A stretch of DNA of 64,000 bases from Octopus bimaculoides. Lineage: Eukaryota. The stretch covers positions 54,274,530 to 54,338,529 of the forward strand of contig NC_068987.1 of the NCBI RefSeq assembly GCF_001194135.2, in the 5' to 3' direction. Of this stretch, positions 13,301 to 57,413 are shown piece by piece. Both the position numbers and the translations under genes were made by a program. Within the stretch, counting starts at the first letter, position 1. Every line of letters begins with the position of its first letter. The notes beneath the pieces were generated by a model that ran no database searches, was not told where the DNA came from, and worked only from the letters and a program-made list of their open reading frames with translations.

Positions 13301-16300
13301 TCTCCACCATCTCACTGGCCCGATCTTTTCTCCACTTGATGTTGGCTGGTCAAAGAAGGGGTTTCCTTCTTGCTGCTCTGCCATAGTAACCAAGTTTCTG
13401 GAGATACCTGACAGCTGTTCTGGGACTGACATCAACTTGCTCTGCTATGTCAGAGGCCTTGCAACAAGGATTATCCTCCACACTTCTCTTAACAAAGAGA
13501 AGGGTCCTGTCAGAGGGCCCTGATTGATCTAGGTGAGGTGATGTGGACTCCTTCACTACTCTGGTGAATTGCACAATCACTCTATTAACTGTAGAAAGCA
13601 GAATCCCAAGGTTTTCTCTGATTTTACACTGACTACATCCACCTTCAGAATGACCCACAATATGGCCTCTTTGAAATTCAGACAATTCCAAAGCTTCTTC
13701 TGTACATGGCCTGATTAAACAGTCACATATAGAACCTGAAACATGAAAATGTCAACTAATAAAAAATATAAACCTTCACAAGTTAGAATGAACATAAAAC
13801 AATGTTTTACGGGGTTTTTATTCACTTCTGTCACGTCTGTGTGTGTGTGGCCTTCGTAGGATTTTCGAGCAAGATCGTTGCCAGCGCCCCTGGACTGGCT
13901 CTTGTGCGGGTGGCACATAAAATACACTATTTTGAGCATGACCGTTGCCAGTACCGCCTGACTGGCCTTTGTACCGGTGGCACGTAAAAGCACTCACTAC
14001 ACTCTCGGAATGGTTGGCGTTAGGAAGGGCATCCAGCTGTAGAAACTCTGCCAAATCAGATTGGAGCCTGATGTAGCCATCTGGTTTCACCAGTCCTCAG
14101 TCAAATCGTCCAACCCATGCTAGCATGGAAAGCGGACGTTAAACGATGATGATGATGATATATATATATATGTGTGTGTGTAGAGAGAGAGACAGACAGA
14201 GACACACACAGATATTATGATTTTATATATGTATGACCTCATATAACCTGATTTTTCCAGTAGAACTTTATGTGCCTTTCATATCTGTGTTGTATCAGTA
14301 TGTCAAATATGTTTTGATTGGCCGATTGCTGTTTTGTCTGATTATTTAAACTAACACTAATCATTTAACCATTTTATTGCTTTTCACCTCACTAAACACA
14401 GATTAACAGATTTCATGACATTGTGTACTCATGTAAACCTTTCCATAACAGATTTTTATTTATTTTTTTATACTTTTTTTCACACCACTATTTTATATTT
14501 TGATGACACATCAGATAGAACTGTTATTATGTAATTATTATTACTAGTTTTGTGGTTGTGGACTTCTGTGAATGTTGTCAAAATAGCTGTATAGTGTTTG
14601 TTATCTGTATTTTCTTATATGATTAGCTTTCAGCATTCAATATAGCTAACTATAAACTCTATGCAACACCGTACATGTTTTGCAGGCCTTTCTCTCATGT
14701 ACAAGCACTAATTTGCAAATACACACATTCACACGCACACGTGTGCCCGCATATATGCACATATGTAAAAGCATTCCAGGGATTCTCCATTTGAGGTTCA
14801 TAGGTGAAGACATGCATATGGAATACATATGCATGATGCATGCACACACATGAACAGTAATGAAACATACATACTCATGCTCTATTGTGACACACCCACT
14901 ACGGCAATTTTATCCACATGCACACATATAACGCTCACATCAACCAGTTCATAAAACTACAAATCCCAAGAGCTGTCTTGACTTTAAACAAAAGTGATTT
15001 ACTACTTCGTTAGTGACCAGCGTAAATATCCAAATGAAAAAAACTTAGAATAAATCCCAAAGAACACGTACATACATGTGTGTGTGTGTGTGTGTGTGTG
15101 TACACACACATATATTTGTCTATGTATGTACGTATGTATTACCATCATTATCATTTAATGTCCATTTACCATGGTAGCATAGGTTGGATGGTTTGACAGG
15201 AGCATATACAGGCATACCTTACCCTACATCATTAATTAGTTCCAGGAGACATGACTTAAGTTGAATTAACTTGTCTCTAAACTAAACCAATAATAACCAT
15301 TCCCAGTTCTGTACTTTATTTATGAATGCAGTTTCAATAATACATACTAAATAAAAAGTTATTTTAAGCTTACAAACAAATGATTTTTTATTTTTAATAC
15401 AGTACAGTAAAAAAAAAATAATCTAAATTTATGGATACAATTTGGTGGTGTTTACCATATATTGTGGATGCTTTATTTATGAATGCTGTTTGCAACAAGA
15501 CATGGTAAAAGAAAAGCCATTTTTAAGCTTAACAAACAAATTCAGTAATTATTGCATCGGGACATCTTTCGCATTGAAGATCGGTGGTTGTCATACGCTG
15601 AGGACGGGTAAATACCCAGAAACTCGAGTCCGTGCGTATCACAGATCAAGATGGGAAGGATGACTTCCCTTTGCAAATACAGACAGGACACAGATGTGTG
15701 TCAATAGCTAGCTGGAGGAGATGTTCTCCTGGGGCTAAAAGCAACAGTAACATCCACCCTTAGGGTTCAGCCACATTTAAGTGGCAAATATACTTCACGT
15801 TGTCGTGCAGTTACTGTTAATATCTTGTTCAGAGATTTAACATTGATTGTCAGTAATTATTATTATTTTGCAATAGTAAAAAAAACGAAATTATTTTAAA
15901 TTTACCAATATGTTCATACAATTTGGTGGTTTACATCACGTAAGTAGATGGCTGTGGATTGTCAACATCAACAGCTGACTCTGGCTGTTCCTGTTGTTTG
16001 ATACACTTGTAACGTGGCTCAGGTTTAACTTCCTCTTCTTCTTTATTTTGCTGCTCGTGAATCTCTATCAAATCCTCATTCATCAGGGCCTGCTTATCTT
16101 TTTCAAAGAAATCTGTAAAATCCTCTTCCAAATCCATTTCCAGTTCTTTGCTCGTAGTCACCAACATTTTGTTGATGGCAACATTATCAAACCCCTTAAA
16201 ATCATTCGTGAATTGTGGGCATAGCTTCTTCCATACACCATTCCTAGCCATGCTCTTCACATCATTCCATGCTGCTGCTATGTTCTGTACAGCCTTGTAG

Positions 16301-19444: not shown

Positions 19445-21145
19445 CATTGTCATCATCATCATTTAACATTCATTTTCCATGCTTACATGGGTTGGGCAAT
19501 TTCACAGGAGCCAACCAACTGAATGGCTGTTTGGGCCCCTTGTCTGTTTTGACATGGTTTCCACTGCTGGATGCCCTTCCTGATACCAACCATTTTACAG
19601 AGTGCACTCGGTGCTTTTATGCAGCACCAGCATGGGCGCTTTTCATGTGGCACCAGCACCTATGTGCTAGAGAGGTTTGCAAGGGCAACCAAACCATAAT
19701 NNNNNNNNNNNNNNNNNNNNNNNNNNNNNNNNNNNNNNNNNNNNNNNNNNNNNNNNNNNNNNNNNNNNNNNNNNNNNNNNNNNNNNNNNNNNNNNNNNNN
19801 GCCCTTCCTGTTGCTAACCCTCACCTGTTTCCAAGCAAGGTAATATTTCTTCATGTCCTGTCATACAAGGGTTAGCTGAAAAGTTCATAGGCTAACCAAG
19901 ACTGTCTCATGGGATGAGAGTGTCTTGGTCAGCCTATGAACTTTTCAGGCTGCATCAACAACAACAGATATGACATCATTATCACTGTGGTACTGGTTTC
20001 AAGCCAAGTATTTTCATATTGGGGGAACAGATGATAGTTAGATGGAACCAATTCAGGAGAATAGGGAGGCTGATCAACCAGTTCACTTCCACAGTCATGC
20101 ACAGCAGCCACTGAAACCAGACTCACTGGCTAATCACAACCCCAGCACCTATTTTGGCACTGTTTTTCTGTGCTGGATAATTGTTTTGATGAAACAAAGA
20201 TCCCTTTTATCAGTTTTCCTGGGTGTTTAGTCTTGGTAGCCTTTCATAACTGTCTCAGTAAGTTGGCATACTTCTTTCTATTGATGGTGAGGCCCTTTTG
20301 AAGATAGTCAATTAACACAATGCCATTTGCATCCCAAAAAATTATGGCCATCACCTTCTCTGCCGATGAAACGACCTTGGCCTTCTTTGAAGCAGGTGAG
20401 GAGGGGTGCGTCCAGTGCATGAACTGTCTCTTTGTCTCTGATTTAAAGTGGTGAAGCCAACACCCATTCTGGCTAAGGAAACATTCAAGGAAACCAGCTG
20501 CATCTTCCTCAAACAATGTCAGATTTTCTTGTGATGTGATCAGCTGTCAAAGGACGCGACCCCCACCGAGTAGAAACTTTCATCCTGCCAAATTTTTGTG
20601 CAGAATATTTTCAACTCTGTCACAGGATATGAAAATAGCATTGGTTGTTTGTTTTTTAATCAATTGCCTGTCATTCATTAGCATGTGGTGAACACGACAA
20701 TATTTTCCTTTGTGGTAGCAGTTGCAGGACATTCAGATCTTGGGTCGTCTTCAAGTCTCCCTTCCACTCCTAAATTCAGTTGCTCACTTTTACGCTTTTG
20801 ATAAAACTGGAGCATCATTTCCTAATGTAGCAACCATGCAGCATAAATACCTTTGGGGTCTAAAGTCTTTTTCTGCCGGTACTTCATAACACGACAATGC
20901 CAAATTTTGTCAATTTTCAAGAGAAGTCACTACTGGTTACTTCTGAAGTGTTCTTTGAACAGCTAGATGTCAGTACCTGGAAAGAAACTATGCCTTTATT
21001 AATAAGAAGAGTGGAAATTAATGCATGCAAGATTTCACAGCTCAAGCATCACTCCTTCATAGTCAGCCTATGAACTTTTCAGCCCACCCTTATACACACT
21101 AAACAAACACATAACACATATAACAATCATGTGTACACCCAACAG

Positions 21146-29401: not shown

Positions 29402-32400
29402 CATATACATATATGTGACGGGCTTCTTTTTCAGTTTCCGTCTACCAAATCCACTCACAAGGTTTTGGTTGGCTCAAGGCTATAGTAGAAGACATTTGCC
29501 CAAGATGCCACGCAGTGGGACTGAACCCAGAACCAAGTGGTTGGTAAGCAAGCTACTTACCACACAGCCATTCCTTTTATGGTTTATTTTTTACTTGTCT
29601 CTCTGATTGGACTGTGGCCATGCTGGGATACTGCCTTGAAGGGCTTAGTTGAACAAATTGATCCAGTACTTATCTTTTAAGACTGGTACTTATTCTATCA
29701 GTCTCTTTTTGCCGAACCACTAAGTTACAAGAATGTAAGCAAACCAACACTGGTTGTCAAGAGTCGGTGGGGGATAAACACATACACACATAGATATATT
29801 ATATATACACATACACAATAGGCTTCTTTCAGTTTTCTGTCTACCAAATTCACTCAAAAGGCTTTGGCTTCCCAGGGTTATAGTATAAGACACTTGCCCA
29901 AGATATGACACGGTGGGACTGAACCTGAAACCATGTTGTTGGGAAGCAAACTTCTTTCCACACAGCCATGCCTATAGCTGAGATAGGGAAGAAAAAAAGT
30001 CACCCATGAAGTTAAACAATATTTTTACTTCTGAAGGCAGCAAGCTAGCAGAAATGTTAGCACGCCAGGCAAAATGCTTAGCGGTATTTCGTCTGTCTTT
30101 ACATTCTGAGTTCAAATTCTGCCATAGTCGACTTTGTCTTTTATCCTTTCAGGGTCGATAAATTAAGTACCAGTTGCATACTGAGGTTGATCTAATCAAC
30201 TGGCCCCCTCCCCCCAAAATTTCAGGCCTTGTGCCAAGAATAGAAAAGAATATTTTTACTTCTGTTTGATTTGGGATTGATATGCAAATGTCTAGTGTCA
30301 ATCAATTTATGAACCAATCAATACAGGTTAAGTTGAAATCACTCATCATTAATATGTTTCCAAAGCTGCATTGCTGGATAAAGCATTTACTTTTGTTGAG
30401 GCATTCATTGAAGCAGATAAGAGACACTTGAAAAGGCATTCATAGAGCCCAATTATAGTCATTTCATTAGTCTTGTTGTTTATAGGCGATAATTTGCAGA
30501 GGCCATTAAGAAATAAGCCCTTTGCATCTACAATAAAAGATTCATAGACTAACAGCACACACATACACACACACACACTCACATATATGAATATATATAT
30601 GTTATTATTATTATTGTTTTTTAATTGGCAGAAAGTTTTGTGCTTTTGACATTTGGGTCACTTTTGTAACTTTCTGCTTGTTTAAAGATAAGAAAAAGAA
30701 ATATTTATATGAAGTGAAATATTAAGTTCTTTTGTTTTCCTAAACCAAGGGTCACCAAACTTTTCATGGTGGGCCAAATAACTGAGTGATTGACAAGCAT
30801 GGTCCATATACCCATTTTGTTCAATACAACACAGTGAATACACAAAAAATAAAGACAACCAAAAAGTTATCAAAGAAGGCAACATTAACAATAAAATAGT
30901 CAAATCACATGCAGTGTGCACATATCCAGATCTTACAAACTGAGCAGCAAAAGAGGTTAGTGAGACTTGTGGAACTGGTGTCTAGCTTTTCAGATATAAT
31001 CAGTATTTGCTTTGGAATTGCTGCATACAACCGAGAGAATTACTTTCAAATGTTCATCAGTCAACCTCGTTTGATGTGTTGACTTCACATACTTCATTTT
31101 TGAAAATGTTTACTCACAGACATAAGTTGTTCCAAGAACTGATGCCATACCAGAGGCAAATGAACTCCCATTACAGGTATTTACACAAAAGGTACAGTGC
31201 AGTGGCAGGCTGGATGAAATAACCTTGCAGGACAGATCCGGCCCACTGGCCATAATTTGGTGACCCCTGTACTAAACACACACACACACACACACACACA
31301 CGTCACATGGACTTCCAAACTGCTTAGCACTATTTTTTTGCTTCTCTCCACTGGATACATTACTCAACCTTTATTTTGAACAATAGACTTACCTAGGAAT
31401 GTACATTAGGAAGAACCCTTTCATGTGGGTCTGAATACCCCCCCCCCCCTATCTTCCAAAACACAATAATCAATAACAAAGCCATGAACTTTCTGCTGTG
31501 CTACGCATTTTTCTACAACAAATGTTCCTGCCTATAATTTCCTGCTTATATTTCTTATATTTCTCCGATGGCGGAATACCCAGTATATGGAACCTTGGAT
31601 CAATAGGATAATCCAGTACCTGGGATATCCCAGAAGCAGCTGTAAGAGACTATATCTATTAATTCTACCTACATTGCTTTAGCATTAACTCTCTTAAATT
31701 AAACTAAACAAATTTAAATGCCATAGTCCTGCCTTGATTAATTGTTTTGCTCTTATTCAACTTACTTCTAGGGACTCAAAGGTAAGATACTGATTGCCAG
31801 TTCTCTCCCACCTGGACATTTGTGCTACTACAGCTTCTGCTCCAGCCCCTGTTTGAACTGGGATTCTAATGGCTTGTCAATTTGGACCACTCAGACTGCA
31901 TACCTATTAGCTTGGGTTAACTTGACCTAAACTCCTCAACTTCTGTATGTGTGTGTATATATATATGTGTGTGTGTATGTTTAGCGATTGTAGTATGGAA
32001 GACACAAGTTAGCAATTCAGAAACATACAGAAACAATTAACTTCAGTTAAACACCCATTTGTAATTTAGTGTCAGACTTTTCATTGTTCAAAACTGCAAC
32101 CTTGTTCACTAGTAAAACATTTTGCTGTATCTTTTGTCAGTGAACTGGTCACAGTTTTGAACGAAGAAAATTTTGACACAGTGTTACAAATAGATGTTTA
32201 AGTGAAGTTGACAGTTTTTGTGTGTTTCATCTGTTTTTGTGTGTTACATCTTCCAGCTGCAACTGCTTTAGTTTCAGTAAGTGATTGCCGATCAAAACAC
32301 TTGCTATGCAAATACATCTTTGTTATATATATACATCATGTGAAAGACCTGACTGTCAGATATTGTTACACATCACCAGTCACAATGCTTTGTTCTGGTC

Positions 32401-40486: not shown

Positions 40487-41499
40487 GTTGTTTCTTTTTC
40501 TTCTTTCTTCAAATTTTCTTCCATTTCTCGCCGAGTGTTTTCCGCACACCTAGGGCAGAGAAACTCGTTGTATGCATTCCCAGTTTACACTCGCAAATTC
40601 ACGGGTAAAATATGTATTTAAAAAAAAAAAAAAAATCATGAATGGATGTTGTTTTCACAGCGATAATGCTCTTCTCAGTACATAAGTCGTTCCAGTTAAC
40701 ACGATTTCTTGCACTTCTTGTAGGGATGGTAAGCCTGGNNNNNNNNNNNNNNNNNNNNNNNNNNNNNNNNNNNNNNNNNNNNNNNNNNNNNNNNNNNNNN
40801 NNNNNNNNNNNNNNNNNNNNNNNNNNNNNNNNNNNNNNNNNNNNNNNNNNNNNNNNNNNNNNNNNNNNNNNNNNNNNNNNNNNNNNNNNNNNNNNNNNNN
40901 NNNNNNNNNNNNNNNNNNNNNNNNNNNNNNNNNNNNNNNNNNNNNNNNNNNNNNNNNNNNNNNNNNNNNNNNNNNNNNNNNNNNNNNNNNNNNNNNNNNN
41001 NNNNNNNNNATTGTTAGCATGCTGGATGAAATCTTTAGCGGTATTTCGCCTGCCATTACGTTCTGAGTTCAAATTTTGCCGAGGCCGGCTTTGCCTTTCA
41101 TTCTTTCGGGGTCAATTAAATAAATACTAGTTACGCTCTGGGGTCAAGGTAATCAACTTACCTCCTCCCCACAAATTTCAGGCCCTGAATAGAAAGGATT
41201 GTTGTTGTTGTTGTTAAGGTGGTCAGCTGGCAGAATCGTTAGCATGCCAGGTAAAATGCTTAGCAGTATTTCGCTTGTCACTACGTTCTCAGTTCAAATT
41301 CTGCCATGGTCGACTTTGCCTTTCATCCTTTTGGGGTCAATAAATTAAGTACCAGTTATGTACTGGGGTCGATGTAATTGACTAGTCCCCCTCCCCACAA
41401 ATTTCAGACCTTGTGCATTTAGTAGAAAGGATTATTATTATTATCATTATTATTTGGCGGCAAGCTTGCAGAATTGTTAGCTCATTGGAAGTAGAAAGG

Positions 41500-41531
<32 letters not shown>

Positions 41532-41748
41532 TATCATTATTTTTTTTTTATATTTAATTTTATTATATTTTTACTATGGTATACTACATATGCTTCTCTT
41601 CAATATCTTATTGTATACTGTCTATATTTTCTATACATTTATACATATATATTTTTCCTTTCATTTCATTATGCGTAAACCCACCACATTTGATGTCTGT
41701 CTTTGTACTGTCCCACCTCATCCTTTGCCCTGGTAGCAAATAAAAGAA

Positions 41749-41783
<35 letters not shown>

Positions 41784-43420
41784 CATCATGATCGTCTATT
41801 TGTTTCTATTAGGTATGGTCACTATATTGAAGGTTCTGGTTCCATTATTCAAATGTCCACAGATGGCCAAGTAAGTATTTTCGAAATGGTTCCATCTAGA
41901 ACTCTTCCTTTAACACTGAGTCATTCAAAGTTTATTTCAACAAGGTTTTCGGTGTTACACTGGTATTACACAGTCGTTACTTTGAAGTTTTTAAAAAAGA
42001 AGCACTTATGGAAATAGATATAAACATGGAACAGAGGTAGTTGTATGCTGTCAACTTAATGTGACAGTCCCCTGAAGGGAATAATACTACTGTTGGTTAG
42101 ACCTAGGAAGCTGCACCGCTTCCTGTCGGCCTTGACACATTTCCTGTGTCCTTATGTTTACAAGGGGGAGACAAGCACCTCTTGTAAACATAAGGACACA
42201 GGAAATGTGTCAAGGCCAACACAAAGCGGTGTAGCTTCCTAGGTCTAACCAACAGTAGTATTATTCCCTTCAGGGGACTGTCACATTAAGTTGACAGCAT
42301 ACAACTACTTCATCGTATCACTACTGCATAAATCTCTCTGAGAGATTTTGAAATGTATTATTTCTAAAAATGGAACAGAGGTGTAACAAAAATGTTTGGT
42401 TTTTATTTTGTCAATTAAGTGTTATTTCCTATTTGTTTTTATCTATAAATCAAAGGAAATGACTACTATTCCCTTCAAACTTTGCTTTTGTGACATGGAC
42501 ATTAGTGTTTTGAAACTGACCTATTTCCCATTACATTTTAGACAGATTCAGCACTGAGTTGCTGAAGCAGAAATATCATTATACCAAATATTCTGCTCAA
42601 TACCACAGATTTACTGGTCAGTTGCATGAGTGACCTTAACCACTTGAGCATGTTTTTTAATGGTTGACAATAAGTGCAACTCTGATCATGAGCAGGAGTA
42701 GCGGTGGAACATCATAGCCATGTGTTGAGAGGGATTCTTCGGGGTTTGAATAAATGTTTGAATAAATGTAACAAAAGAAAATAAATGCCAGCTGTCTGCT
42801 AGTGCAGTATTCTATCCCTCCACCTCTTTGGAGTCTGTCAGAAACCCACAGTCAAGTTATCCAGTGCATAGTGTGTACATATGAAATGAGGTTCCTCCAA
42901 TGGGTCTTTGGAGTTACATTACTCGGCAATGTGCATAGCTCAGGGATAACAACATACCCTTAACATCTGAGATGTTGTAAGGGTATGTTATATGATAGAT
43001 TTGGCTGTTGCTTCTAGCCAGTCAAATGATCTCTTAGGAACTTCTTCATTGGCTCATAGTAATACCAATAGTCAGTACTTATTGGAGGAATTCTATTATA
43101 TCTTTCTACCTACCTTACAAACATGAACACTACCTTTGCACGCTCAGTTATGGCTTGAATGAATTTCAAGAAAGAAACCAGTGAATCATTGAATGAATTC
43201 AACATGATAATTATTTGTTTTTCTAAAACTTCAGTCGGTAAAAGATGCCTATGACTTGAAAATGAAGACACAGCAGCTAAAAAACCGTAAGCAGTGGAGC
43301 GAGGAGGAATTTAATGTTGTACGGAAACTAAAGCTACGTTTCTTTACCCCAAGAGAGATTGCTAATCTGTTATGTTTCCCTCACACATTTGGTGAGTATT
43401 TTGAGCAAGATTTGTCAGAC

Positions 43421-43502
<82 letters not shown>

Positions 43503-43838
43503 TTGTGTGCATATATAAATATATATATATATATACANNNNNNNNNNNNNNNNNNNNNNNNNNNNNNNNNNNNNNNNNNNNNNNNNNNNNNNNNNNNNNN
43601 NNNNNNNNNNNNNNNNNNNNNNNNNNNNNNNNNNNNNNNNNNNNNNNNNNNNTTATTGCATCCTCTTTCTCTCTCTGTCTATTTATCTTTTTATCTATAT
43701 ATCTGTCTCTTCTTATTCACTATCCACCTTAGGCGGTATCCCCCCCCCCTATCTCCCTCTGTCATTCTGAATTTCCTTACACCTTTCCATTTATGCTAAT
43801 TCCATCCTTTTTCCATTCCTTCCCTACTACCTCTCTCT

Positions 43839-43877
<39 letters not shown>

Positions 43878-46800
43878 TGATCAGCCTCATTGTCATCATC
43901 ATTATCATCATCATCATCATCACTTGCCATTAAAACTCTGAGCCTCAGAGATAGAATGGAAATGATAAGAAATAGTCAGCAGGTGAGAATGGGATTGATT
44001 CCACACCAGTCTGACACCACCACCACCACACTCATGTTTCGTGTTATTTACCCCCCACCCCACCCTGGAATGTTGCTCCTCCCTTGTTCCTCTTTGCTTT
44101 CTCCACCCTTTTGACTGGAAGGAACCTTCTACCAGAGAATTTCTGTTGGTGGTGGGATGAAGACAGAGGCCAGACATGGTAGCAGTGAGAGGGGGGTGGA
44201 GACAGAGATGCTAAGTGTAGGTGGAGAAGGAAGTGCCTGGACAAGAATGTTTTGGGAGTTCTTCATTTTAGCACAAATAAGCTACTACCATCACTACTCT
44301 CACCACTACCCTCACCAACTTCAGTACTTCCATTTCAATCACTACCACCATCAGCATCACCATCATCATCACCACTACAACCATCATCATCATCACTAGT
44401 CATCATCATAAGGATTGCTATATCCATTGCCCACATCATTTCCATTCCTGTATTGCTGAAGCATACTGCTTTCATTGTCACCACCCCTATAGATGACAAC
44501 ACCATTATTTAAGCCGACGAGAAGGCCATTACTTAGCTGCTTAGTCTGGTAGAAACAGCAACCAAATCTTCTTCAAATAACATCCTACCAACTTAAAAAT
44601 GTAGTCCTGGGTTTCCTGCACATAAAAAGAAAGAAACAATGGGATGATCACATCTGGAATACATCCAGTCATAGATCTGCTAAGGGCTAACCTGTGACTA
44701 AACAACAATACGATCAGGAACCAACGATAGAATCTATATATACATAGAGGATTTACCTTTTACCAGCCATATCCAGCCAGAATATTCTAACAGTTTTATG
44801 CTGAAACTGGCCCGATCTGGCCTCTCACACTTACCTTACAGTGTTATTCTAGAAATAAACAATCATGTCATTGAATTCCCAAAGTTACAAGATAATTAAT
44901 GATTAATTCAAAGGAATGTCAATAAATAGGCATCACATTTGGCTGAGTGATCTGAATGTTAACCCTTTCGTTACTGTATTTATTTTGAGATGCTCTGTGT
45001 TTCTTTCAATTACTTTAACTATAACAAAGAATTTAGTAAAATAACTCAGTTATCATTTAGCTACTGTTAGGAATATAAATTGTGACTAAGGTTTGGTGGA
45101 AGATTTTAATTCAAAACTTATGAAAACAAGGCATTTGTACTCAGATCCAGTGCTGGTTTCAGCCGGGTTGGTAACTTCAACTTCTGCAGGGTCAGTTGTG
45201 CGACGTGCGGCCAAGCTTGGTTTTGAAGAAGAATTGGTCCTTTTCTATTGACCAATGCTGGTTATTGTTGTCGGAGTTTCTTATGCATTTCATCCATTTG
45301 CTGACAGTACTTCTCCGCTGTAATGATTTCGCCTGGATCCAAAAAGCTGTGATGGATGAGACGGGCCGCAGACCAAATAGTGACCATGACCTTCTTTTGG
45401 TGCAGCTTTGGCTTCCGGAAGTGCCATGGAGCTTCGTCAGCATCCAACCACTGAGCTGAGCATTGCCAGTTGTCATAAAGAATCTACTTTTCATCNNNNN
45501 NNNNNCTCAAGTCACAATCCGGTCGAGAAACAGGTTATTCTTGTTGCGTGAAAGAAGGGAAGCTGACACTTCAAAACGGCGTTTTTTTTTTGGTTGTTGT
45601 TCAATTCGTGCGGCACCCATTTCGCAAGTATTTTTGTTTTTCCAATCTCTTTCAAGTGGTTGGATATTGTTGTATACATTACGTCTAATTCAGAAGCAAG
45701 CTCTCGAACAGTTGGGCATGGACTGGCTTCTACTAAGGATCTTAGTTGATTGTTGTCAGCATCTGATGGCTGACCACTACGCTTATCATCTTCAAGACTC
45801 TCACTACCGCTATGGAATTTCTTGAACCACCATTTTGCTGTACGTTCATTAGTGGTTCCTGGGTCAAACACATCGTTCATATCGCGAGCTGTTTCAGCAA
45901 CTTTTCAGCCTAGCTTGAACTGGAATAAGAAAATTGTGCGAATTTGCTTTTTGTTCATGTTGTATTCAACGTTCCAGAAAAAAAATGGCCTAATTATTCA
46001 AAAAGAAAAAGAGTAACACGATTAGATAGAGCGAAAAACAGGTTTTAAAATGATATATAAAGCCAAAGTAATTTAATGAAAATTAATTTGAAAATACATT
46101 ATTTAAAACCAAAATTTAAAATTCCGTAAGAACTTTCTTGACAACCTAATAGCAGAGAAAGTTTAAATAAATGGCTGAAAATGTTGCTTTATAAATACAC
46201 TTTTCATAATTCAATTTTTTTTCTCACGCATTCACTTGCAGTGTTTGACTTTTTCCTTCATTGTGAAAAGTACAATGGAGGGATGAGGGAGTAAGGATTT
46301 TTTTCTTTTAACGTGAGTTACAAATGTTTCAGAATGTAAAATACAGAAAATGACAGAAAATTACAGAAAAGAAAAATATATCATTTTAGTGGTTGCTGTT
46401 CCAAAGGTATGATGTATGTGTCTGTGTGAAGGAAGAGACAAACATTGAAAAGACATGGATTTTTAAACTTTTGTTTTAAAAAAGCTTCCCTTCATTGTTT
46501 TGGAATGCATGAAAAAGAGGGAAAATCCTGACAAAATTTGTGGAATTCCAACATATATGGGACAGCTATTCTGAAAGAATTCTATTTCTCCATCAGATGA
46601 CAACATACAAGTTCTGGTCTTCTCATAGGTCTTTGCAATAACAAGAACTAGTTCTTCTGGAATGTCATATGCTTGAAGGATCTTCCATATTTTGTAATGA
46701 TGGGTGTTGTCAAACCCATGGCTAAAACCCACAAAGGTTATAATGGCAGGTAGCAATCTTGATTTAACTCCTATGATATGCCTCAGGGCTAAGATCTGAG

Positions 46801-47952
46801 ATGTTGTGGCTCTCCTTGGTCTAAATCCATTTTGATTTGGTCTTACATGGCTATCAAGCACCTGTTGAATCCTGTTGAGGATCTTTCAGTTGATGACTTT
46901 GAGTAAGATGCTGGACAGTGCAATTCCTCTGTAGTTAGTTCTATTGCCGGGGTTTCCTGACTTTGGGATTGGTATCAAGTTAACCTCAGACCTCTGATCT
47001 GGACTTTCTTGGTTCTGCAAGAGCTTATTTGCAAAATCCAGTATTATTTCATCCTGATTACATCTCTTGATAACTTCAAGGGGAATTTCATCAGGGCCAG
47101 CAACTTTTCCTTCTTTCAGTCAATTTTTGGTCCTCTGAATTCTTTCAAATATTAACTGGGGTAGTAAAGGAGATACGCTTGCACCATATCTGTTTGTAAC
47201 TGTATTGGATTATGCAATGCATAAGTTTAAAAATCCATGTCTTTTCAATGTTTGTCTCTTCCCTCACACAGATTATGCAATGCATAATCCAGTGGACAAC
47301 AGTGACAAAAATAATGAAAAGAGAAAAAGGTTAAATTAAATGAATACATGTGAGCATAAAAGCAATAATTCTAAAGCTGAAGAAAGAAATGCTTTGAGCT
47401 ATTGAGAGATCTGATTTTATAATCAAAACTAAATTCAAAATTTAAATTTTACTACAGGCACAGGAGTGGCTGTGTGGTAAGTAGCTTGCTTACCAACCGC
47501 ATGGTTCAGGGTTCATTCCCACTGCATGGCATCTTGGGCAAGTGCCTTCTACTATAGCCTCGGACCGACCAAAGCCTTGTGAGTGGATTTGGTAGACGGA
47601 AACTGAAAGAAGCCTGTCGTATATATGTATGCATATATATGTGTGTGTCTATGTTTGTGTTTCTGTGTTTGTCCCCCCAACATCACTTGACAACCGATGG
47701 TGGTGTGTTTACGTCCCCGTAACTTAGTGGTTCGGCAAAAGAGACCGATAGAATAAGTACTAGGCTTACAAAAAATAAGTCCTGGGGTCAATTAGCTCGA
47801 CTAAAAGGCGGTGCTCCAGTATGGCCACAATCAAATAACTGAAACAAGTAAAAGAGTAAAGAGTATTACCTACTTGCTCTTTCATAAAATAAGACCAGTT
47901 TTCAATGCCTCACTGAAATAAAGAAGTTTACAATGGCAATATATGTGTATGC

Positions 47953-47990
<38 letters not shown>

Positions 47991-49156
47991 ACATGAATAT
48001 CTTTAATGGCCAGTAATCAACTTAAGATCACTGCTCAGTCATGCATTGAAATAAGAAATCTAAACTAGAGACAATAAATAACTTCTTTCTATCAATCTCT
48101 TTATCCTTCTATCTCACACACACATACTCAAACACAAACACCAATTCCCATGGGAATTATAGATGCTTTGAGAATGGGTAGCAAAGTGTTTTTTAATTGA
48201 ATAAATTGATGTCACTTATGTAGTTAAAACTGGTTATTTATCAAAAAAGAGAGTCCATTACATTTTTTACAATATTTTCATTTATTGAGAGAAACCCCCT
48301 GCATGCAAGATCGCTAAGAGATGGGACCCCCTATACTGAGTGCTACATAACCTTCATAGTAGGAGGGTCCTTTAACTGTGGATGTCCGTGGCAATTGCCC
48401 TCTTTGACCCCCTATAAATCCAACCCTGCCTGTGCTATCTTTTAAGTCTTGTATTTATTCTATCAATCGCTTTTGCCAAACTGCTTCATTATGAGGATGT
48501 AAACAACCCAACACCAGTTCTCGAGTAGTGGTGGGTGAGAAATACATGTACACATTTGCCATTTTGCAAAACAGCAAATAAAAAGACAACCTCCTTTGTG
48601 ATAGACAGCTGAAGGGATACATCTGCACCTATGATGCACCACAACTCTTTGTACAGCATTCCACCTGTGATGTACCAGTGTACGATGGGTCGAAACAATT
48701 ATAGTGAATAAAGAGTCTTGTGAATTTCATTTCTTTCTTTCAAATTTTTATAAGTTCTACAGACACAAAGGAATTCCTTAAGTAAATCCTGTTGATGACA
48801 TCAGATAGCTGAATACTGTGAATAGGCTTTAAATGTATGCTCGAATATAGAGCTATTATATTTATATAATGTGTGTGTGTGTGTGTGTGTCTATATATAT
48901 AATGTACATGCATGTTTATATATATAATGTATGTGTATGTATATTCTTTTACTTGTTTCAGTCATTTGACTGCAGCCATACTGGAGCACTGCCTTTGGTC
49001 AAGCAAATTGACCCCAAGACTTATTCTTTGTAAGCCTAGTACTTATCCTATCGACCTCTTTTGCCGAACCGCTAAGTTATAGAGACGTAAACGCACCAAC
49101 ATCAGTTGTCAAGCGATGTTGGGGAGACAAACACAGACACACAAACATATACACAC

Positions 49157-49194
<38 letters not shown>

Positions 49195-50706
49195 GACAGG
49201 CTTCTTTCAGTTTCTCTCTGCCAAATCCACTCAAGGCTTTGGTCGGCCCGAGGCTATAGTAGAAGACACTTGCCCAAGGTGCCATACAGTAGAACTGAAC
49301 CCGGAACCATGTGATTTGTGAGCAAGCTACTTACCACACAGCCACTCATGTGTATGTGTCCCTGTGTTTGTATACATGTATATATATATATAAGATCGGA
49401 AGAGCGTNNNNNNNNNNGTTTTGATTATCATGAGGGTATAGCAGAAGATACTTGCCCAAGGTGCCATGAAGGGACTGAACCCAGAACCATGTGATTGGGA
49501 AGCAAACCTCTTACCACACAACACTGATATCAACAAATACATTAGTGTGCCTTTCCTTTTTTTTTGCTTTGGGTGTTATTTAAGGAAGAGTTGGCTACTA
49601 TTTCTAGCTGATTATACCACCACTTGTGTAGGGGCCTCCTGATTAACCTCACAATACTGTTAGAGTTTGTGTGTGTGTTTGGTTGTGGTGGGTTGCCACA
49701 GCTGTCAAGGGCTGAGAAATGGCACGCTTCTTGACATTCAACAATTCCATATCTTCCTTTACCTTCTTCCACTCCTGCCACCCCTGTAAGTCATACCCTT
49801 TCTCCTCCCTTGCTTGCTTCTCATCCTCACTTAAAGACAACAATATATGCTCCTCCACTTCTACCATCACCACCACAGCCACCATACAGGCACACATTCC
49901 AGAAAGAGGAAGGTTATGGCAGTAGTATATATGTATGTGTGTGTGTGTGTATATGTATGTCTGTCTGTCTATGTATGTATATATGTAACACTGTCCCTTT
50001 TCTGCCTGCTTCTTCCTTTTTTCTGCTCCTTCTTCCTTTTATCACCTCACCCACCATTTCAGGACTCCCATATGTTTGTATTTACAGTACATACATACAT
50101 AACTAAAGCCTTGGAGATATCATTCTATCTTCCCCTCATCTTCAACCCACCTTTTAATGGTTGGTGGGCACACTTAGAAAGTGTGTGTAAATATGTGGGT
50201 ATTTGCTTGTCTGGCATGTGGAGCGGGGGAGGGGGGTCCTGTTGCCAGGCATTAGTGTATCAACAGTCATGTGTCTTCATTCCCATGGCAGGAATATACA
50301 TTACCCTCACTCCTTTGGTTCATTCACAAACATGCACATCTGTTTACAAGGGAACATCTATCAATGATGATAGATGTGCATGTGTGTGTGTGTGTGTATG
50401 TATATGCTCTTTCTCTTTTACTCTCTTTTACTTGTTTCAGTCATTTGACTGCGGCCATACTGGAGCACTGCCTTTAGTCGAGCAAATCGACCCCAGGACT
50501 TATTCTTTGTAAGCCTAGTACTTATTCTATCGGTCTCTTTTTGCTGAACCTCTAAGTTACGGGGACGTAGACACACCAGCATCAGTTGTCAAGCGATGTT
50601 AGGGGGACAAACACAGACACACAAACACACACACACACACACACANNNNNNNNNNNNNNNNNNNNNNNNNNNNNNNNNNNNNNNNNNNNNNNNNNNNNNN
50701 NNNNNN

Positions 50707-53371: not shown

Positions 53372-53402
<31 letters not shown>

Positions 53403-53588
53403 TACACACNNNNNNNNNNNNNNNNNNNNNNNNNNNNNNNNNNNNNNNNNNNNNNNNNNNNNNNNNNNNNNNNNNNNNNNNNNNNNNNNNNNNNNNNNNN
53501 NNNNNNNNNNNNNNNNNNNNNNNNNNNNNNNNNNNNNNNNNNNNNNNNNNNNNNNNNNNNNNNNNNNNNNNNNNNNNNNNNNNNNNNN

Positions 53589-53622
<34 letters not shown>

Positions 53623-55325
53623 ATGTGAGAGAGTTAGGGGTTGGGGGTTCAACCCACTAAGGGATAGTATCCAGTATACTGCTGGGAGGGTACCCAATTA
53701 TTGCTACACTAGTGCTATCCTAGGTGCAATCAATGGGAGCGGGTAAAAGTGGAGGTTTTACCCAAAATTTGTGTAACAATTAGAAAATGGAGGATAATAT
53801 GCTGAACCCAACTACTCGCAGACGGTGTATCCCGTTGAATTCATTAGTTTAATTCATAGCAAAAGTGACAAAAAAAGGAAGAAAAGAAAAAGAAAGAAAG
53901 AACTAAAGCACAGGTGTCCATGGCAGACTATGTTATTTTGCCAACATGGTTTACATATAGAGGTACAAAGTACATAAGGAATTAGAGGATGATATCAGGT
54001 CATTAAGAATGAAATGTCTGATTTTCTTATGCACCTAGTTTGACAGTCAATAACTCTAATGTTTTGTCCTGACAATTCTTTGTTTTACCACATTCAAGAG
54101 TTACATCATCACTTTTCGAAATGTAATTCATGGTGTCTGATTATATTGTGAGTTTTCTCTTGTAAATCAATTTTTGTGAACCCATGCATAGATCAAAAAT
54201 TTATGTTGTTTATGAATGAGTTCCGTCGTGGAACCAATGCATCCCAGACAGATGGAAGCATCAATGATGTGCTTGGTGAAGATATGGCGAATAAGCGCAC
54301 TGTATGTCAAGAAGTTCCTATCTGGTGACTTTAGTTTTGAAAACCAGCCCTGTGGTAAACTTGAGACCAAGGTGGATAATGATGAGCTGGAAACTGTAGT
54401 GGAAGCAGATACATCTCAAACTACGTATGAGTTAGCAGCAAGGTTTGATGTTTCGATTCCAACTGTATTGGACCATCTGCAACAAATCAGCAAGGTAAAG
54501 AAGCTGGACAAGTGGGTACCACACAAAATGAACTGGCATCAAATGACACGTCGTCTTGAAACTTGCTGTTTTTTGTTGTCACGGCATAAAAGCGAACTAT
54601 TTTTGCATTGTACTGTTACGTGTGATGAAAAATAGGTTCTTTTCAACAATAGCAAGCATTCTGCATGGAGGTTCGATAGAGACGAAGTGCCAAGACAATC
54701 CCAAAAAGAATATTCACCAAAAAAAGGCTAAAGGTGTCTGTTTGGTGGTCTAGCACTGTTGTCATCCACTACAGCTTCATGAGACCGGATAAGGCAATTA
54801 CAGTGAATCAACCAACTGGATGAAATGATGAGTGAACTTGCAAACTGAGATTGGTCGAGACAGGCCAATTCTCTTGCAAGACAATGCTCGACCACATGGT
54901 GCACAAAGAATGCTACTCAAGTTACAGGAACTGAACTTGGAAGTATTTCATCATCTACCATATTCACCAAACCTTGCACCAACTGACTATCATGTTTTCC
55001 AGACATTAGACAACTTTTTGCAATGAAGAAACTTCAAATCTGAAGAAGATGCAAAAATAGCCTTTTGTAATTTCATTTCCTGTTTCTCTCCGGATTTTTT
55101 GCTGCCAACATAAATAAGCTACCGATAAAATGGCAAAATTGTGTGCATACTTTGATTAACTGCATCGCTTTTTGTTGAGATAAAATAAAATAAACTTTCA
55201 GTTCAGAATTGGACATTTCATTCTTAATGACATGATATATATATAGCATTTAATTAAAACTGAAATTGAGTGTTTGCCTCATGATTCAAGTTTCACACTG
55301 ATCTTCAGACAAAACTACAGTGGAG

Positions 55326-56767: not shown

Positions 56768-56802
<35 letters not shown>

Positions 56803-57413
56803 CGTGAGNNNNNNNNNNNNNNNNNNNNNNNNNNNNNNNNNNNNNNNNNNNNNNNNNNNNNNNNNNNNNNNNNNNNNNNNNNNNNNNNNNNNNNNNNNNN
56901 NNNNNNNNNNNNNNNNNNNNNNNNNNNNNNNNNNNNNNNNNNNNNNNNNNNNNNNNNNNNNNNNNNNNNNNNNNNNNNNNNNNNNNNNNNNNNNNNNNNN
57001 NNNNNNNNNNNNNNNNNNNNNNNNNNNNNNNNNNNNNNNNNNNNNNNNNNNNNNNNNNNNNNNNNNNNNNNNNNNNNNNNNNNNNNNNNNNNNNNNNNNN
57101 NNNNNNNNNNNNNNNNNNNNNNNNNNNNNNNNNNNNNNNNNNNNNNNNNNNNNNNNNNNNNNNNNNNNNNNNNNNNNNNNNNNNNNNNNNNNNNNNNNNN
57201 NNNNNNNNNNNNNNNNNNNNNNNNNNNNNNNNNNNNNNNNNNNNNNNNNNNNNNNNNNNNNNNNNNNNNNNNNNNNNNNNNNNNNNNNNNNNNNNNNNNN
57301 NNNNNNNNNNNNNNNNNNNNNNNNNNNNNNNNNNNNNNNNNNNNNNNNNNNNNNNNACAGCCTTCCTGTCACCAAGCCCCGCCTGTTTGCAAGCAAGTTA
57401 ATCTTTCCCCAAG

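What the first reader, a model, noticed from the sequence alone, without database searches (positions are those of the whole stretch)
42037..42308. Near-perfect 128-bp foldback 166 nt downstream of exon 7
Seen: arms at 42037-42164 and 42181-42308, a 16-nt loop and only 4 mismatches (one G.U, one C.C, and two A.C mismatches at A42218 and A42223). The arm sequence matches no other repeat in the window. Transcribed in the pre-mRNA it would form a long dsRNA, a strong ADAR and Dicer substrate (A opposite C is the favoured editing context). It is close enough to affect splicing of the 58-nt exon encoding the tRNA-recognition region. In DNA it could extrude a cruciform. High arm identity implies a recent origin or gene conversion.
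Basis: partly seen in the sequence, partly recalled or inferred. Interest (0 to 1): 0.7.

Follow-up and report, generated by a model that had tools for sequence, protein, structure and literature searches.

The report
Retroposon insertion that copied itself backwards
The long hairpin in this DNMT2 (tRNA methyltransferase) intron is real, but it is most likely the by-product of one short mobile-element insertion whose DNA copy folded back and copied itself, so it is an ordinary kind of genomic debris with no demonstrated function.

Summary
The foldback exists as described. Its arms are 42034-42167 and 42178-42311 (134 nt, 96% complementary, 10-nt loop; RNA MFE -265.6 kcal/mol, z = -33). It lies in the DNMT2/TRDMT1 intron, 163-166 nt after the 58-nt exon.

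- **Flanking repeat.** A perfect 13-bp direct repeat (ATGGAACAGAGGT, 17/18 if extended) brackets the foldback plus a 58-nt one-sided tail. This marks a 331-bp insertion with a target-site duplication (TSD).
- **A relative in the window.** The unit "right arm + tail" has a diverged, single-orientation relative at 15667-15842. That relative sits inside a 296-nt element with no terminal inverted repeats (TIRs), its own 12-bp TSD and a paralogous empty site.
- **The turn-around.** It aligns to a short native hairpin of that element.

Best reading: a 5'-truncated SINE-like retroposon inserted by target-primed reverse transcription. Its cDNA end snapped back on the native hairpin and copied about 125 nt of itself, then joined the target by 4/5 microhomology.

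The MITE reading fails the TSD test. The dsRNA, ADAR, Dicer and splicing ideas remain untested inference. Low interest; new member of a known kind.

The parts
42026..42038 (+). Upstream copy of the target-site duplication ATGGAACAGAGGT. It extends to 42021 as TAAAC+13, giving 17/18 identity with the downstream copy.
   Evidence: there are only two copies in the window. Only 0.2% of random placements in this window show a >=12-mer bracket of this kind.
42039..42163 (-). Left arm: an inverted (antisense) copy of 42182-42306, inferred to be the product of snap-back synthesis.
   Evidence: inverted repeat; the reciprocal nhmmer hit Z99-238 matches 42181-42044 on the minus strand. Nothing upstream of it resembles the Z head.
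42164..42181 (+). Turn-around: GGGG-GAGACAAGCA-CCTC (loop 42168-42177). It is homologous to a native short hairpin of the element family.
   Evidence: alignment A1: it aligns to Z CAAGAT-GGGAAG-GATGA-CTTCCC-TTTG; homology to Z starts at 42163.
42182..42311 (+). Right arm: the sense copy of the 5'-truncated element body. The last 5 nt (42307-42311, ACTTC) pair 4/5 with the end of the upstream TSD, which I read as 5'-junction microhomology.
42312..42369 (+). One-sided 58-nt tail: the 3' end of the element. It contains the stem-loop AAATCTCT-CTG-AGAGATTT and ends in ...TTTCTAAAA.
   Evidence: the homology with Z runs straight from the arm into the tail (to 42350-42352); the local hairpin is predicted.
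42370..42382 (+). Downstream copy of the target-site duplication ATGGAACAGAGGT.
15554..15849 (+). Element Z: a 296-nt diverged family member in single orientation, without TIRs. It is flanked by the 12-bp TSD TCAGTAATTATT (15542-15553 and 15850-15861).
   Evidence: 23.6 bits, E = 1.6e-6; 300 shuffles reach at most 11.2 bits. (direct repeat and reciprocal hits). (paralogous empty site: X1-Y1 adjacent versus X2-Z-Y2). (no TIRs).
41813..41870 (+). The 58-nt DNMT2 exon (..[19 protein letters not shown]) upstream of the foldback.
43235..43392 (+). The next DNMT2 exon (SVKDAYDL...[18 protein letters not shown]). The intron 41871-43234 hosts the insertion.

Best explanation
The foldback is the product of one retroposition event.

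1. A short SINE-like element, or the 3' end of its LINE partner, was copied into the intron by target-primed reverse transcription. This family has no terminal inverted repeats and makes 12-13-bp target-site duplications.
2. Reverse transcription started at the element's 3' end (the tail, 42312-42369) and ran through the body (the right arm).
3. It stopped about 97 nt short of the full-length 5' end, at a native stem-loop (42164-42181).
4. The 3' end of the new cDNA folded back on this stem-loop and primed DNA synthesis on the cDNA itself. This copied about 125 nt in the inverted sense (the left arm, 42039-42163).
5. The extended end then annealed to the upstream target overhang through a 4/5 microhomology (GAGGT versus GAAGT), and second-strand synthesis fixed the structure between the two TSD copies.

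Shown: the inverted repeat, the TSD, the one-sided tail, the family relative with its own TSD and empty site, the 5' truncation relative to it, and the match between the turn-around and a native hairpin.

Inferred: the RNA intermediate, the snap-back step and the identity of the reverse transcriptase.

Consequence, by inference only: the pre-mRNA intron carries a 134-bp near-perfect duplex, which is most likely neutral. It has gained 3-4 substitution events since formation.
For: - **The insertion has a TSD.** A perfect 13-bp direct repeat (17/18 when extended) abuts the left arm and lies 58 nt beyond the right arm. These are its only two copies in the window. The chance of such a bracket is about 0.2%.
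- **Right arm and tail are one contiguous unit.** A relative at 15667-15842 spans both parts in one orientation: nhmmer 23.6 bits, E = 1.6e-6. The best of 300 dinucleotide shuffles scored 11.2 bits, and the reversed query gave nothing. Reciprocal hits from Z reach both arms.
- **Z behaves as a retroposon.** It is 296 nt with no TIRs and a perfect 12-bp TSD. A paralogous empty site exists: segments X and Y are adjacent in one copy and separated by Z in the other.
- **5' truncation with a shared 3' end.** The foldback copy starts at Z position ~98 and shares the 3' end to within 10-19 nt.
- **The turn-around matches a native hairpin.** It aligns to a native Z hairpin beyond which Z is not palindromic.
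- **An independent precedent in the window.** A 46-nt 5'-truncated LINE 3' end sits between 17-bp TSDs, with 4/5 microhomology at its 5' junction. An RT-bearing LINE fragment is also present.
- **Published precedent.** cDNA snap-back 5' junctions were observed in R2-protein-mediated insertions (PMC11371274). Self-priming has been proposed for head-to-head Penelope-like element insertions (PMC3846280). Inverted duplications from self-annealed ends occur at L1 TPRT sites (bioRxiv 10.1101/2024.12.14.628481).
Against: - Only one relative was found. It is distant (about 60% identity in the nhmmer alignment and 48% in a global MAFFT alignment), so the family is defined by two copies.
- There is no clear poly(A) or simple-repeat tail (the foldback copy ends ...CTAAAA; Z ends ...TTGATTG).
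- No tRNA, 7SL or 5S head was detected in Z, and no partner LINE was identified.
- No orthologous or allelic empty site could be obtained for the foldback itself.
- The RNA intermediate and the snap-back step are inferred from anatomy alone.
Confidence: 0.62

Rival explanations
1. It is a Penelope-like-element (PLE) type insertion. PLE reverse transcriptase and GIY-YIG endonuclease characteristically leave a 5'-truncated copy with an adjacent inverted 5'-truncated copy (head to head), an optional extension ('tail') at one end only, and a TSD. The foldback would then be a minimal PLE-mobilised unit and not a LINE-type snap-back.
For: The architecture matches published descriptions: an inverted 5'-truncated copy adjacent at the 5' end; a 30-40-bp tail often at one end only; 8-10-bp TSDs; palindromes at the inverted junction, interpreted as self-priming (PMC8557442; PMC3846280). 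PLEs are abundant in many invertebrate genomes.
Against: The tail here is not an extra extension. It is homologous to the contiguous 3' part of Z. No hammerhead ribozyme or any Rfam match was found in the arms or in Z. No PLE RT or GIY-YIG sequence was seen among the seven long TE-like ORFs scanned with Pfam. Z itself is a plain single-orientation insertion.
Confidence: 0.12
2. Two-step origin. An ordinary 5'-truncated (or longer) retroposon copy inserted first. Later a DNA break at its hairpin was repaired by fold-back (snap-back) DNA synthesis and microhomology-mediated end joining, which created the inverted left arm at the DNA level.
For: Fold-back priming at resected 3' ends is an established route to inverted duplications (for the L1-associated cases). 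The junction shows 4/5 microhomology. The final structure would look identical.
Against: This needs the repair junction to fall exactly at the boundary of the upstream TSD copy, with no leftover 5' element sequence. The single-event model explains that adjacency and the microhomology without any coincidence.
Confidence: 0.12
3. It is a MITE or foldback DNA transposon with about 130-bp terminal inverted repeats, cut and pasted by a Tc1/mariner/pogo-type transposase that duplicates TA.
For: Long inverted arms are typical of foldback-type MITEs. TA is present at both arm ends (42038-39 and 42306-07). Mariner and pogo transposase remnants are abundant in the window.
Against: TA is self-complementary inside a palindrome, so it carries no information. 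No TSD of 3 bp or more abuts the arms at any symmetric or near-symmetric boundary. The 13-18-bp direct repeat and the one-sided tail are left unexplained (p about 0.002). The only relative (Z) has one orientation, no TIRs and a 12-bp TSD. The arm ends do not resemble the TIR starts usual for Tc1/mariner/pogo elements; this last point rests on my own knowledge.
Confidence: 0.06
4. It is an assembly artefact: a chimeric or fold-back read was collapsed into the scaffold.
For: The window is a gapped draft assembly with N runs at about 40.7-41.0 kb and 43.5-43.6 kb. Palindromes are a known artefact class.
Against: The arms differ at 5-6 positions, mostly transitions, one of them at a CpG. An artefact would give identical arms. 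The structure has a unique loop, unique flanks on both sides and a TSD, and its loop matches a native hairpin of a related element.
Confidence: 0.03

Closest known systems
cDNA snap-back 5' junctions in R2-protein-mediated TPRT (PRINT experiments; PMC11371274)
   Same: An antisense copy of the inserted sequence is joined to the upstream target. It is produced when the cDNA 3' end primes synthesis on the cDNA itself before the 5' junction forms. The 3' junction is normal.
   Different: Those events were seen in engineered insertions at rDNA in human cells. This one is a natural, fixed insertion in an invertebrate-like genome, made by an unknown RT, with a 13-bp TSD and a turn-around at a native element hairpin.
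Head-to-head inverted insertions of Penelope-like elements (PMC8557442, PMC3846280)
   Same: An inverted 5'-truncated copy is adjacent to a direct copy. There is asymmetry at one end, a flanking TSD and a palindrome at the inverted junction. Self-priming is the proposed cause.
   Different: There is no PLE coding sequence, pLTR or hammerhead ribozyme here. The one-sided tail is part of the element, not an added extension. The family relative is a plain single-orientation insertion.
L1 5' inversion by twin priming
   Same: It is also a TPRT insertion with a TSD whose 5' part is inverted relative to the 3' part.
   Different: Twin priming inverts a different, more 5' segment of the RNA, so no palindrome results. 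Here the same segment is present in both orientations.
MITEs and foldback elements as hairpin sources (for example MADE1-type palindromic MITEs)
   Same: It is a short non-coding TE-derived unit that folds into a long hairpin when transcribed within an intron.
   Different: It has no transposase-type TSD at the arm ends, it has an asymmetric tail, and its relative lacks TIRs. It arose by inverted self-copying, not from two transposon ends.

Membership tests
TIR DNA transposon / MITE | A target-site duplication of superfamily-specific length directly abutting both inverted-repeat ends | tested here: not met
   the only match at any boundary is the self-complementary TA (42038-39 and 42306-07). 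No TSD of 3 bp or more was found.
TIR DNA transposon / MITE | Other family members share the two-armed (TIR) structure | tested here: not met
   the only relative (Z, 15554-15849) has a single orientation and no TIRs. Only the 64-kb window could be searched.
Non-LTR retroposon (SINE or 5'-truncated LINE) inserted by TPRT | A variable-length TSD of roughly 7-20 bp flanking the whole insert | tested here: met
   13 bp perfect (17/18 extended) for the foldback insert. 12 bp perfect for Z. 17 bp for an unrelated LINE 3' fragment.
Non-LTR retroposon (SINE or 5'-truncated LINE) inserted by TPRT | Copies share the 3' end and are variably truncated at the 5' end | tested here: met
   the foldback copy begins at Z position ~98. 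The 3' ends coincide to within 10-19 nt. This rests on two copies only.
Non-LTR retroposon (SINE or 5'-truncated LINE) inserted by TPRT | A 3' poly(A) or simple-repeat tail | tested here: inconclusive
   The foldback copy ends ...TTTCTAAAA, overlapping a TAAAC target. Z ends ...CATTGATTG with no A-run; the nearby A-run at 15877-15886 belongs to the host pogo UTR.
Non-LTR retroposon (SINE or 5'-truncated LINE) inserted by TPRT | A pol III-type head (tRNA, 7SL or 5S) for a SINE, or an identified partner LINE | tested here: not met
   ARAGORN found nothing. Rfam E-value scans of both loci and a gathering-threshold scan of the window gave no tRNA, 7SL or 5S match above noise. A partner LINE cannot be tested without the genome.
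Penelope-like element insertion | Hammerhead ribozyme in the pLTR, or PLE RT/GIY-YIG homology | tested here: not met
   Searches found no hammerhead. No PLE protein domain was seen among the seven long TE-like ORFs scanned with Pfam. Naiad-type PLEs lack canonical hammerheads, so this is not decisive.
Penelope-like element insertion | A head-to-head inverted 5'-truncated copy plus a one-sided 30-40-bp extension | tested here: inconclusive
   The head-to-head arrangement is present. However, the 58-nt one-sided segment is homologous to the contiguous 3' part of Z, so it is element sequence and not an extension.
L1-type twin-priming inversion | The inverted segment derives from a different, more 5' part of the template than the direct segment | tested here: not met
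   both orientations carry the same 125-134 nt.
miRNA or hpRNA gene | A match to a curated precursor family, or small-RNA evidence | tested here: not met
   the best hit is mir-627 at 60.9 bits against a gathering score of 86. Similar scores occur on both strands for several unrelated miRNA models, so these are generic hairpin matches. Small-RNA data cannot be tested here.

The most novel reading that the evidence does not exclude
Snap-back retroposition at native element hairpins may be a recurrent, one-step route by which this genome creates long, near-perfect hairpin-RNA loci inside genes. On that reading, this copy would be biologically active in DNMT2 pre-mRNA: as an ADAR recruitment or 'editing inducer' element, as an endo-siRNA source, or as a modulator of inclusion of the 58-nt exon in the target-recognition region.
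Probability: 0.06. Interest if true: 0.55.

Novelty: new member of a known kind. Interest (0 to 1): 0.22.

Why it matters
For annotation, the feature should be labelled as a TE-derived inverted self-duplication, not as a MITE, a miRNA or a regulatory hairpin. It is also a clean natural example of how one retroposition event can create a perfect long palindrome: the turn-around sits on a native stem-loop of the element, and both junctions are still readable. This kind of event has mostly been documented in engineered R2 systems and for Penelope-like elements. If such events are common in this genome, they would be an under-counted source of intronic dsRNA and of fragile palindromes. For DNMT2 itself nothing suggests a consequence.

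Tried and rejected
- **blastn of arm, tail and whole insert against the window** (word size 7): only self hits. nhmmer was needed to find the relative.
- **Orthologous or allelic empty site via proteins**: the best DNMT2 homologue is 53% identical and lies on short Logan contigs (1.4-1.9 kb). The species and its close relatives are absent, so I spent no more protein searches.
- **Collection scans** with a 26-mer from the arm and a 22-mer from the tail in metagenome contigs, and a 21-mer in viral contigs: 0 hits.
- **Paralogous empty site for the foldback** using the joined flanks: no paralogue in the window.
- **Rfam**: only sub-threshold generic hairpin hits at the foldback, and nothing at the gathering threshold anywhere in the window. 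ARAGORN found no tRNA.
- **Profile built from Z plus the foldback copy**: no further convincing copies. The next hit has E = 0.029.
- **A-run at 15877-15886 as Z's poly(A) tail**: rejected, because it belongs to the duplicated pogo 3' UTR segment Y.
- **Resemblance of GAGGTAGT at the left arm end to the let-7 seed**: rejected as coincidence, because GAGGT is target (TSD) sequence.
- **Base composition**: the arms are 43-47% GC against a local mean of 37%, but 9% of nearby windows are as high, so this is only weak evidence of foreign origin.
- **Literature search for natural self-primed SINE/LINE hairpins**: nothing specific.
- **Compensatory changes in the sub-hairpins between Z and the foldback copy**: they look real by eye in two stems but depend on the alignment register, so I do not rely on them.

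Full report
**Observation.** The foldback is present as described. The repeat finder gives arms 42034-42167 and 42178-42311: 134 nt, 96% complementary, with 10 nt between them. It adds a G.T next to the loop (42165/42180) and one in the outermost five pairs (42036/42309). Folded as RNA, 42020-42390 has an MFE of -265.6 kcal/mol against -91.4 +/- 5.2 for shuffles (z = -33). Folded as DNA it gives -154.4 kcal/mol (z = -30). It is the longest and cleanest short-loop palindrome in the window.

**Host gene.** The window is a gapped draft eukaryotic assembly, about 37% GC, rich in microsatellites and transposon remnants. The peptides flanking the feature match DNMT2/TRDMT1 (human DNMT2, PDB 1g55, E = 5.6e-19; weak PF00145 hits). 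The 58-nt exon is 41813-41870 with donor GT at 41871, and the next exon is 43235-43392. The foldback therefore lies in a 1364-nt intron on the sense strand. It starts 163-166 nt after the exon and ends 923 nt before the acceptor, so it overlaps no core splice signal. I did not verify the exon number or establish the organism.

The 13-mer ATGGAACAGAGGT occurs exactly twice in the window, at 42026-42038 and 42370-42382. With one mismatch the repeat extends to 18 nt (TAAAC/TAAAA + 13). The upstream copy abuts the left arm. The downstream copy lies 58 nt beyond the right arm. In 200,000 random placements of a 278-nt interval in this window, only 0.2% had a direct repeat of 12 nt or more arranged in this way. 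So the unit 42039-42369 (331 bp) looks like an insertion with a target-site duplication. It consists of the left arm, the loop, the right arm and a unique tail that ends ...TTTCTAAAA.

**DNA-transposon test.** No TSD of 3 bp or more abuts the arms at any symmetric or near-symmetric boundary. The only match is TA, which is self-complementary inside a palindrome and so carries no information. A 13-18-bp duplication does not fit any TIR superfamily that I know of; this point rests on my own knowledge.

**A family relative in the window.** blastn found no other copy. nhmmer, using loop + right arm + tail (42168-42369) as query, hit 15667-15842 on the + strand (23.6 bits, E = 1.6e-6). The alignment runs without a break from the arm into the tail (query positions 11-185). 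The control is clean: 300 dinucleotide-preserving shuffles reached at most 11.2 bits, and the reversed query gave nothing.

The hit lies inside a 296-nt unit, Z (15554-15849). Z is bracketed by a perfect 12-bp direct repeat, TCAGTAATTATT, which again has only two copies in the window. Z interrupts a duplicated stretch of the 3' UTR of a pogo-like transposon. Segments X and Y are adjacent in one copy (15314-15381, then 15385-15470). In the other copy they are separated by Z and its duplication (X2 15471-15541, Y2 15860-15950; X copies 83% identical, Y copies 67%). This serves as a paralogous empty site for Z.

Z has no terminal inverted repeats and no Rfam or tRNA match. Searching back with Z hits both foldback arms: Z98-286 matches 42163-42350 (+) at E = 2.8e-6, and Z99-238 matches 42181-42044 (-) at E = 7.5e-6. 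Three conclusions follow:
- "Right arm + tail" is one contiguous element body.
- The family inserts with 12-13-bp TSDs and has no TIRs.
- The foldback copy lacks the first ~97 nt of Z but shares its 3' end to within 10-19 nt. This is the 5'-truncation pattern typical of target-primed reverse transcription.

**The turn-around.** In alignment A1, the centre of the foldback is ACAAG-GGGG-GAGACAAGCA-CCTC-TTGT. It lines up with a short native hairpin of Z, CAAGAT-GGGAAG-GATGA-CTTCCC-TTTG. In Z the palindrome ends there, and the upstream sequence is an unrelated head. The 134-bp palindrome is therefore derived, and it starts from a native stem-loop. The G.T mismatch next to the loop is most simply a native imperfection of that stem.

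At the outer end, the inverted repeat runs 5 nt into the upstream TSD copy with one mismatch (GAGGT versus GAAGT). I read this as microhomology at the 5' junction.

**Precedent for the machinery in this genome.** An RT-bearing LINE fragment lies on the minus strand at about 46421-47020 (RVT_1, E = 1e-4). Its last 46 nt recur in the + orientation at 47225-47270, between perfect 17-bp direct repeats (47208-47224 and 47271-47287). That copy also shows 4/5 microhomology at its 5' junction. So extremely 5'-truncated TPRT insertions with long TSDs and microhomologous 5' junctions do occur in this genome.

**Mechanism (inference).**
1. The bottom strand was nicked at the left edge of the future TSD.
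2. Reverse transcription ran from the element's 3' end through the tail and body.
3. At the native stem-loop the cDNA 3' end folded back and primed on the cDNA itself, copying about 125 nt.
4. The extended end annealed to the upstream overhang through GAGGT/GAAGT, and second-strand synthesis completed the insertion.

The strand polarity is consistent. The left arm read on the minus strand equals the right arm read on the plus strand, as snap-back predicts.

This type of 5' junction has been observed directly in R2-protein-mediated insertions (PMC11371274). Self-priming has been proposed for the head-to-head inverted copies of Penelope-like elements (PMC3846280; PMC8557442). Self-annealed ends at L1 TPRT sites give inverted duplications (bioRxiv 10.1101/2024.12.14.628481).

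**Age.** The arms differ by 3-4 mutational events over about 125 nt. One is at a CpG (left arm TCGG versus TTGG). One is an adjacent double change in the right arm; there the left arm keeps the GG seen in Z and a perfect local hairpin. The 13-bp TSD is still perfect. By contrast, Z and the foldback copy are only about 60% identical. The event is young relative to the family, but it was not made yesterday.

**Rivals.**
- *PLE-type head-to-head insertion.* It shares the architecture. However, the one-sided tail is element sequence, no hammerhead or PLE protein was found, and Z is a plain insertion.
- *Two-step origin (later DNA-level fold-back repair).* This cannot be excluded, but it needs the repair junction to coincide with the TSD boundary.
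- *MITE.* It fails the TSD test and the family-structure test.
- *Assembly artefact.* Unlikely, because the arms differ by transitions and the structure has a unique loop, unique flanks and a TSD.

**Function.** Nothing here shows function. The Rfam hits are all below gathering scores. They occur on both strands and for several unrelated miRNA models, so they reflect only a perfect hairpin. A 134-bp intronic duplex would be expected to bind ADAR and perhaps Dicer, from general knowledge. No expression, editing or small-RNA data were available. No orthologue close enough for conservation analysis exists in the searchable collections.

**Verdict.** The feature is real and TE-derived. Its origin is explained with moderate confidence as a snap-back retroposition. 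It is a new member of a known kind and of low interest, apart from being a tidy natural example of one-step palindrome birth.

Noticed in passing
window 47208-47287 (with 46421-47020): A 46-nt 5'-truncated copy of the 3' end of an RT-bearing LINE fragment lies between perfect 17-bp direct repeats (GATTATGCAATGCATAA), with 4/5 microhomology at its 5' junction. Together with the parent fragment it forms a 53-nt, 96% inverted repeat 746 nt apart.
   Followed up: yes
window 15314-15950: The 3' UTR of a pogo-like transposon (DDE_1 ORF 16324-16839, minus strand) is partly duplicated in tandem (X1-Y1, then X2-Z-Y2). This duplication is what supplied the paralogous empty site for element Z.
   Followed up: partly
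window 19876-19948: A 73-nt near-perfect hairpin (35-nt arms, 91% complementary, 3-nt loop) lies about 300 nt from a mariner transposase remnant (20244-20516). It could be a tiny palindromic MITE made of two TIRs, or a small-RNA precursor.
   Followed up: no
window 32020-32228: An older foldback: 82-nt arms, 78% complementary, 45-nt spacer. Its origin was not examined.
   Followed up: no
window 47454-47805 versus 48994-49357 (also 50423-50639): Inverted pairs of an abundant SINE-like repeat (about 350 nt, 87-90% complementary) lie 1.2-2.8 kb apart, downstream of the DNMT2 exon at 43235-43392. If they are transcribed together they are another potential long-dsRNA source. Whether they lie within the gene was not checked.
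   Followed up: no
window 41010-41413 and 41745-41790: Tandem units of about 225-234 bp, each ending in an (ATT)n microsatellite, sit just upstream of the 58-nt exon. The last (ATT)n run ends about 20 nt before the acceptor AG, in the position of the polypyrimidine tract.
   Followed up: no
window ~40700-41000, ~43540-43640, ~53400-53600, ~56800-57350 and others: Runs of N (assembly gaps) occur inside and around the gene, so the sizes and contents of neighbouring introns are incomplete.
   Followed up: no
window 13350-13691, 20244-20516, 45192-45880, 54216-54635: Several decayed Tc1/mariner-type transposase fragments are present (Transposase_1 E = 1.6e-16; HTH domains). DNA transposons have therefore been active in this genome as well as retroposons.
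   Followed up: partly
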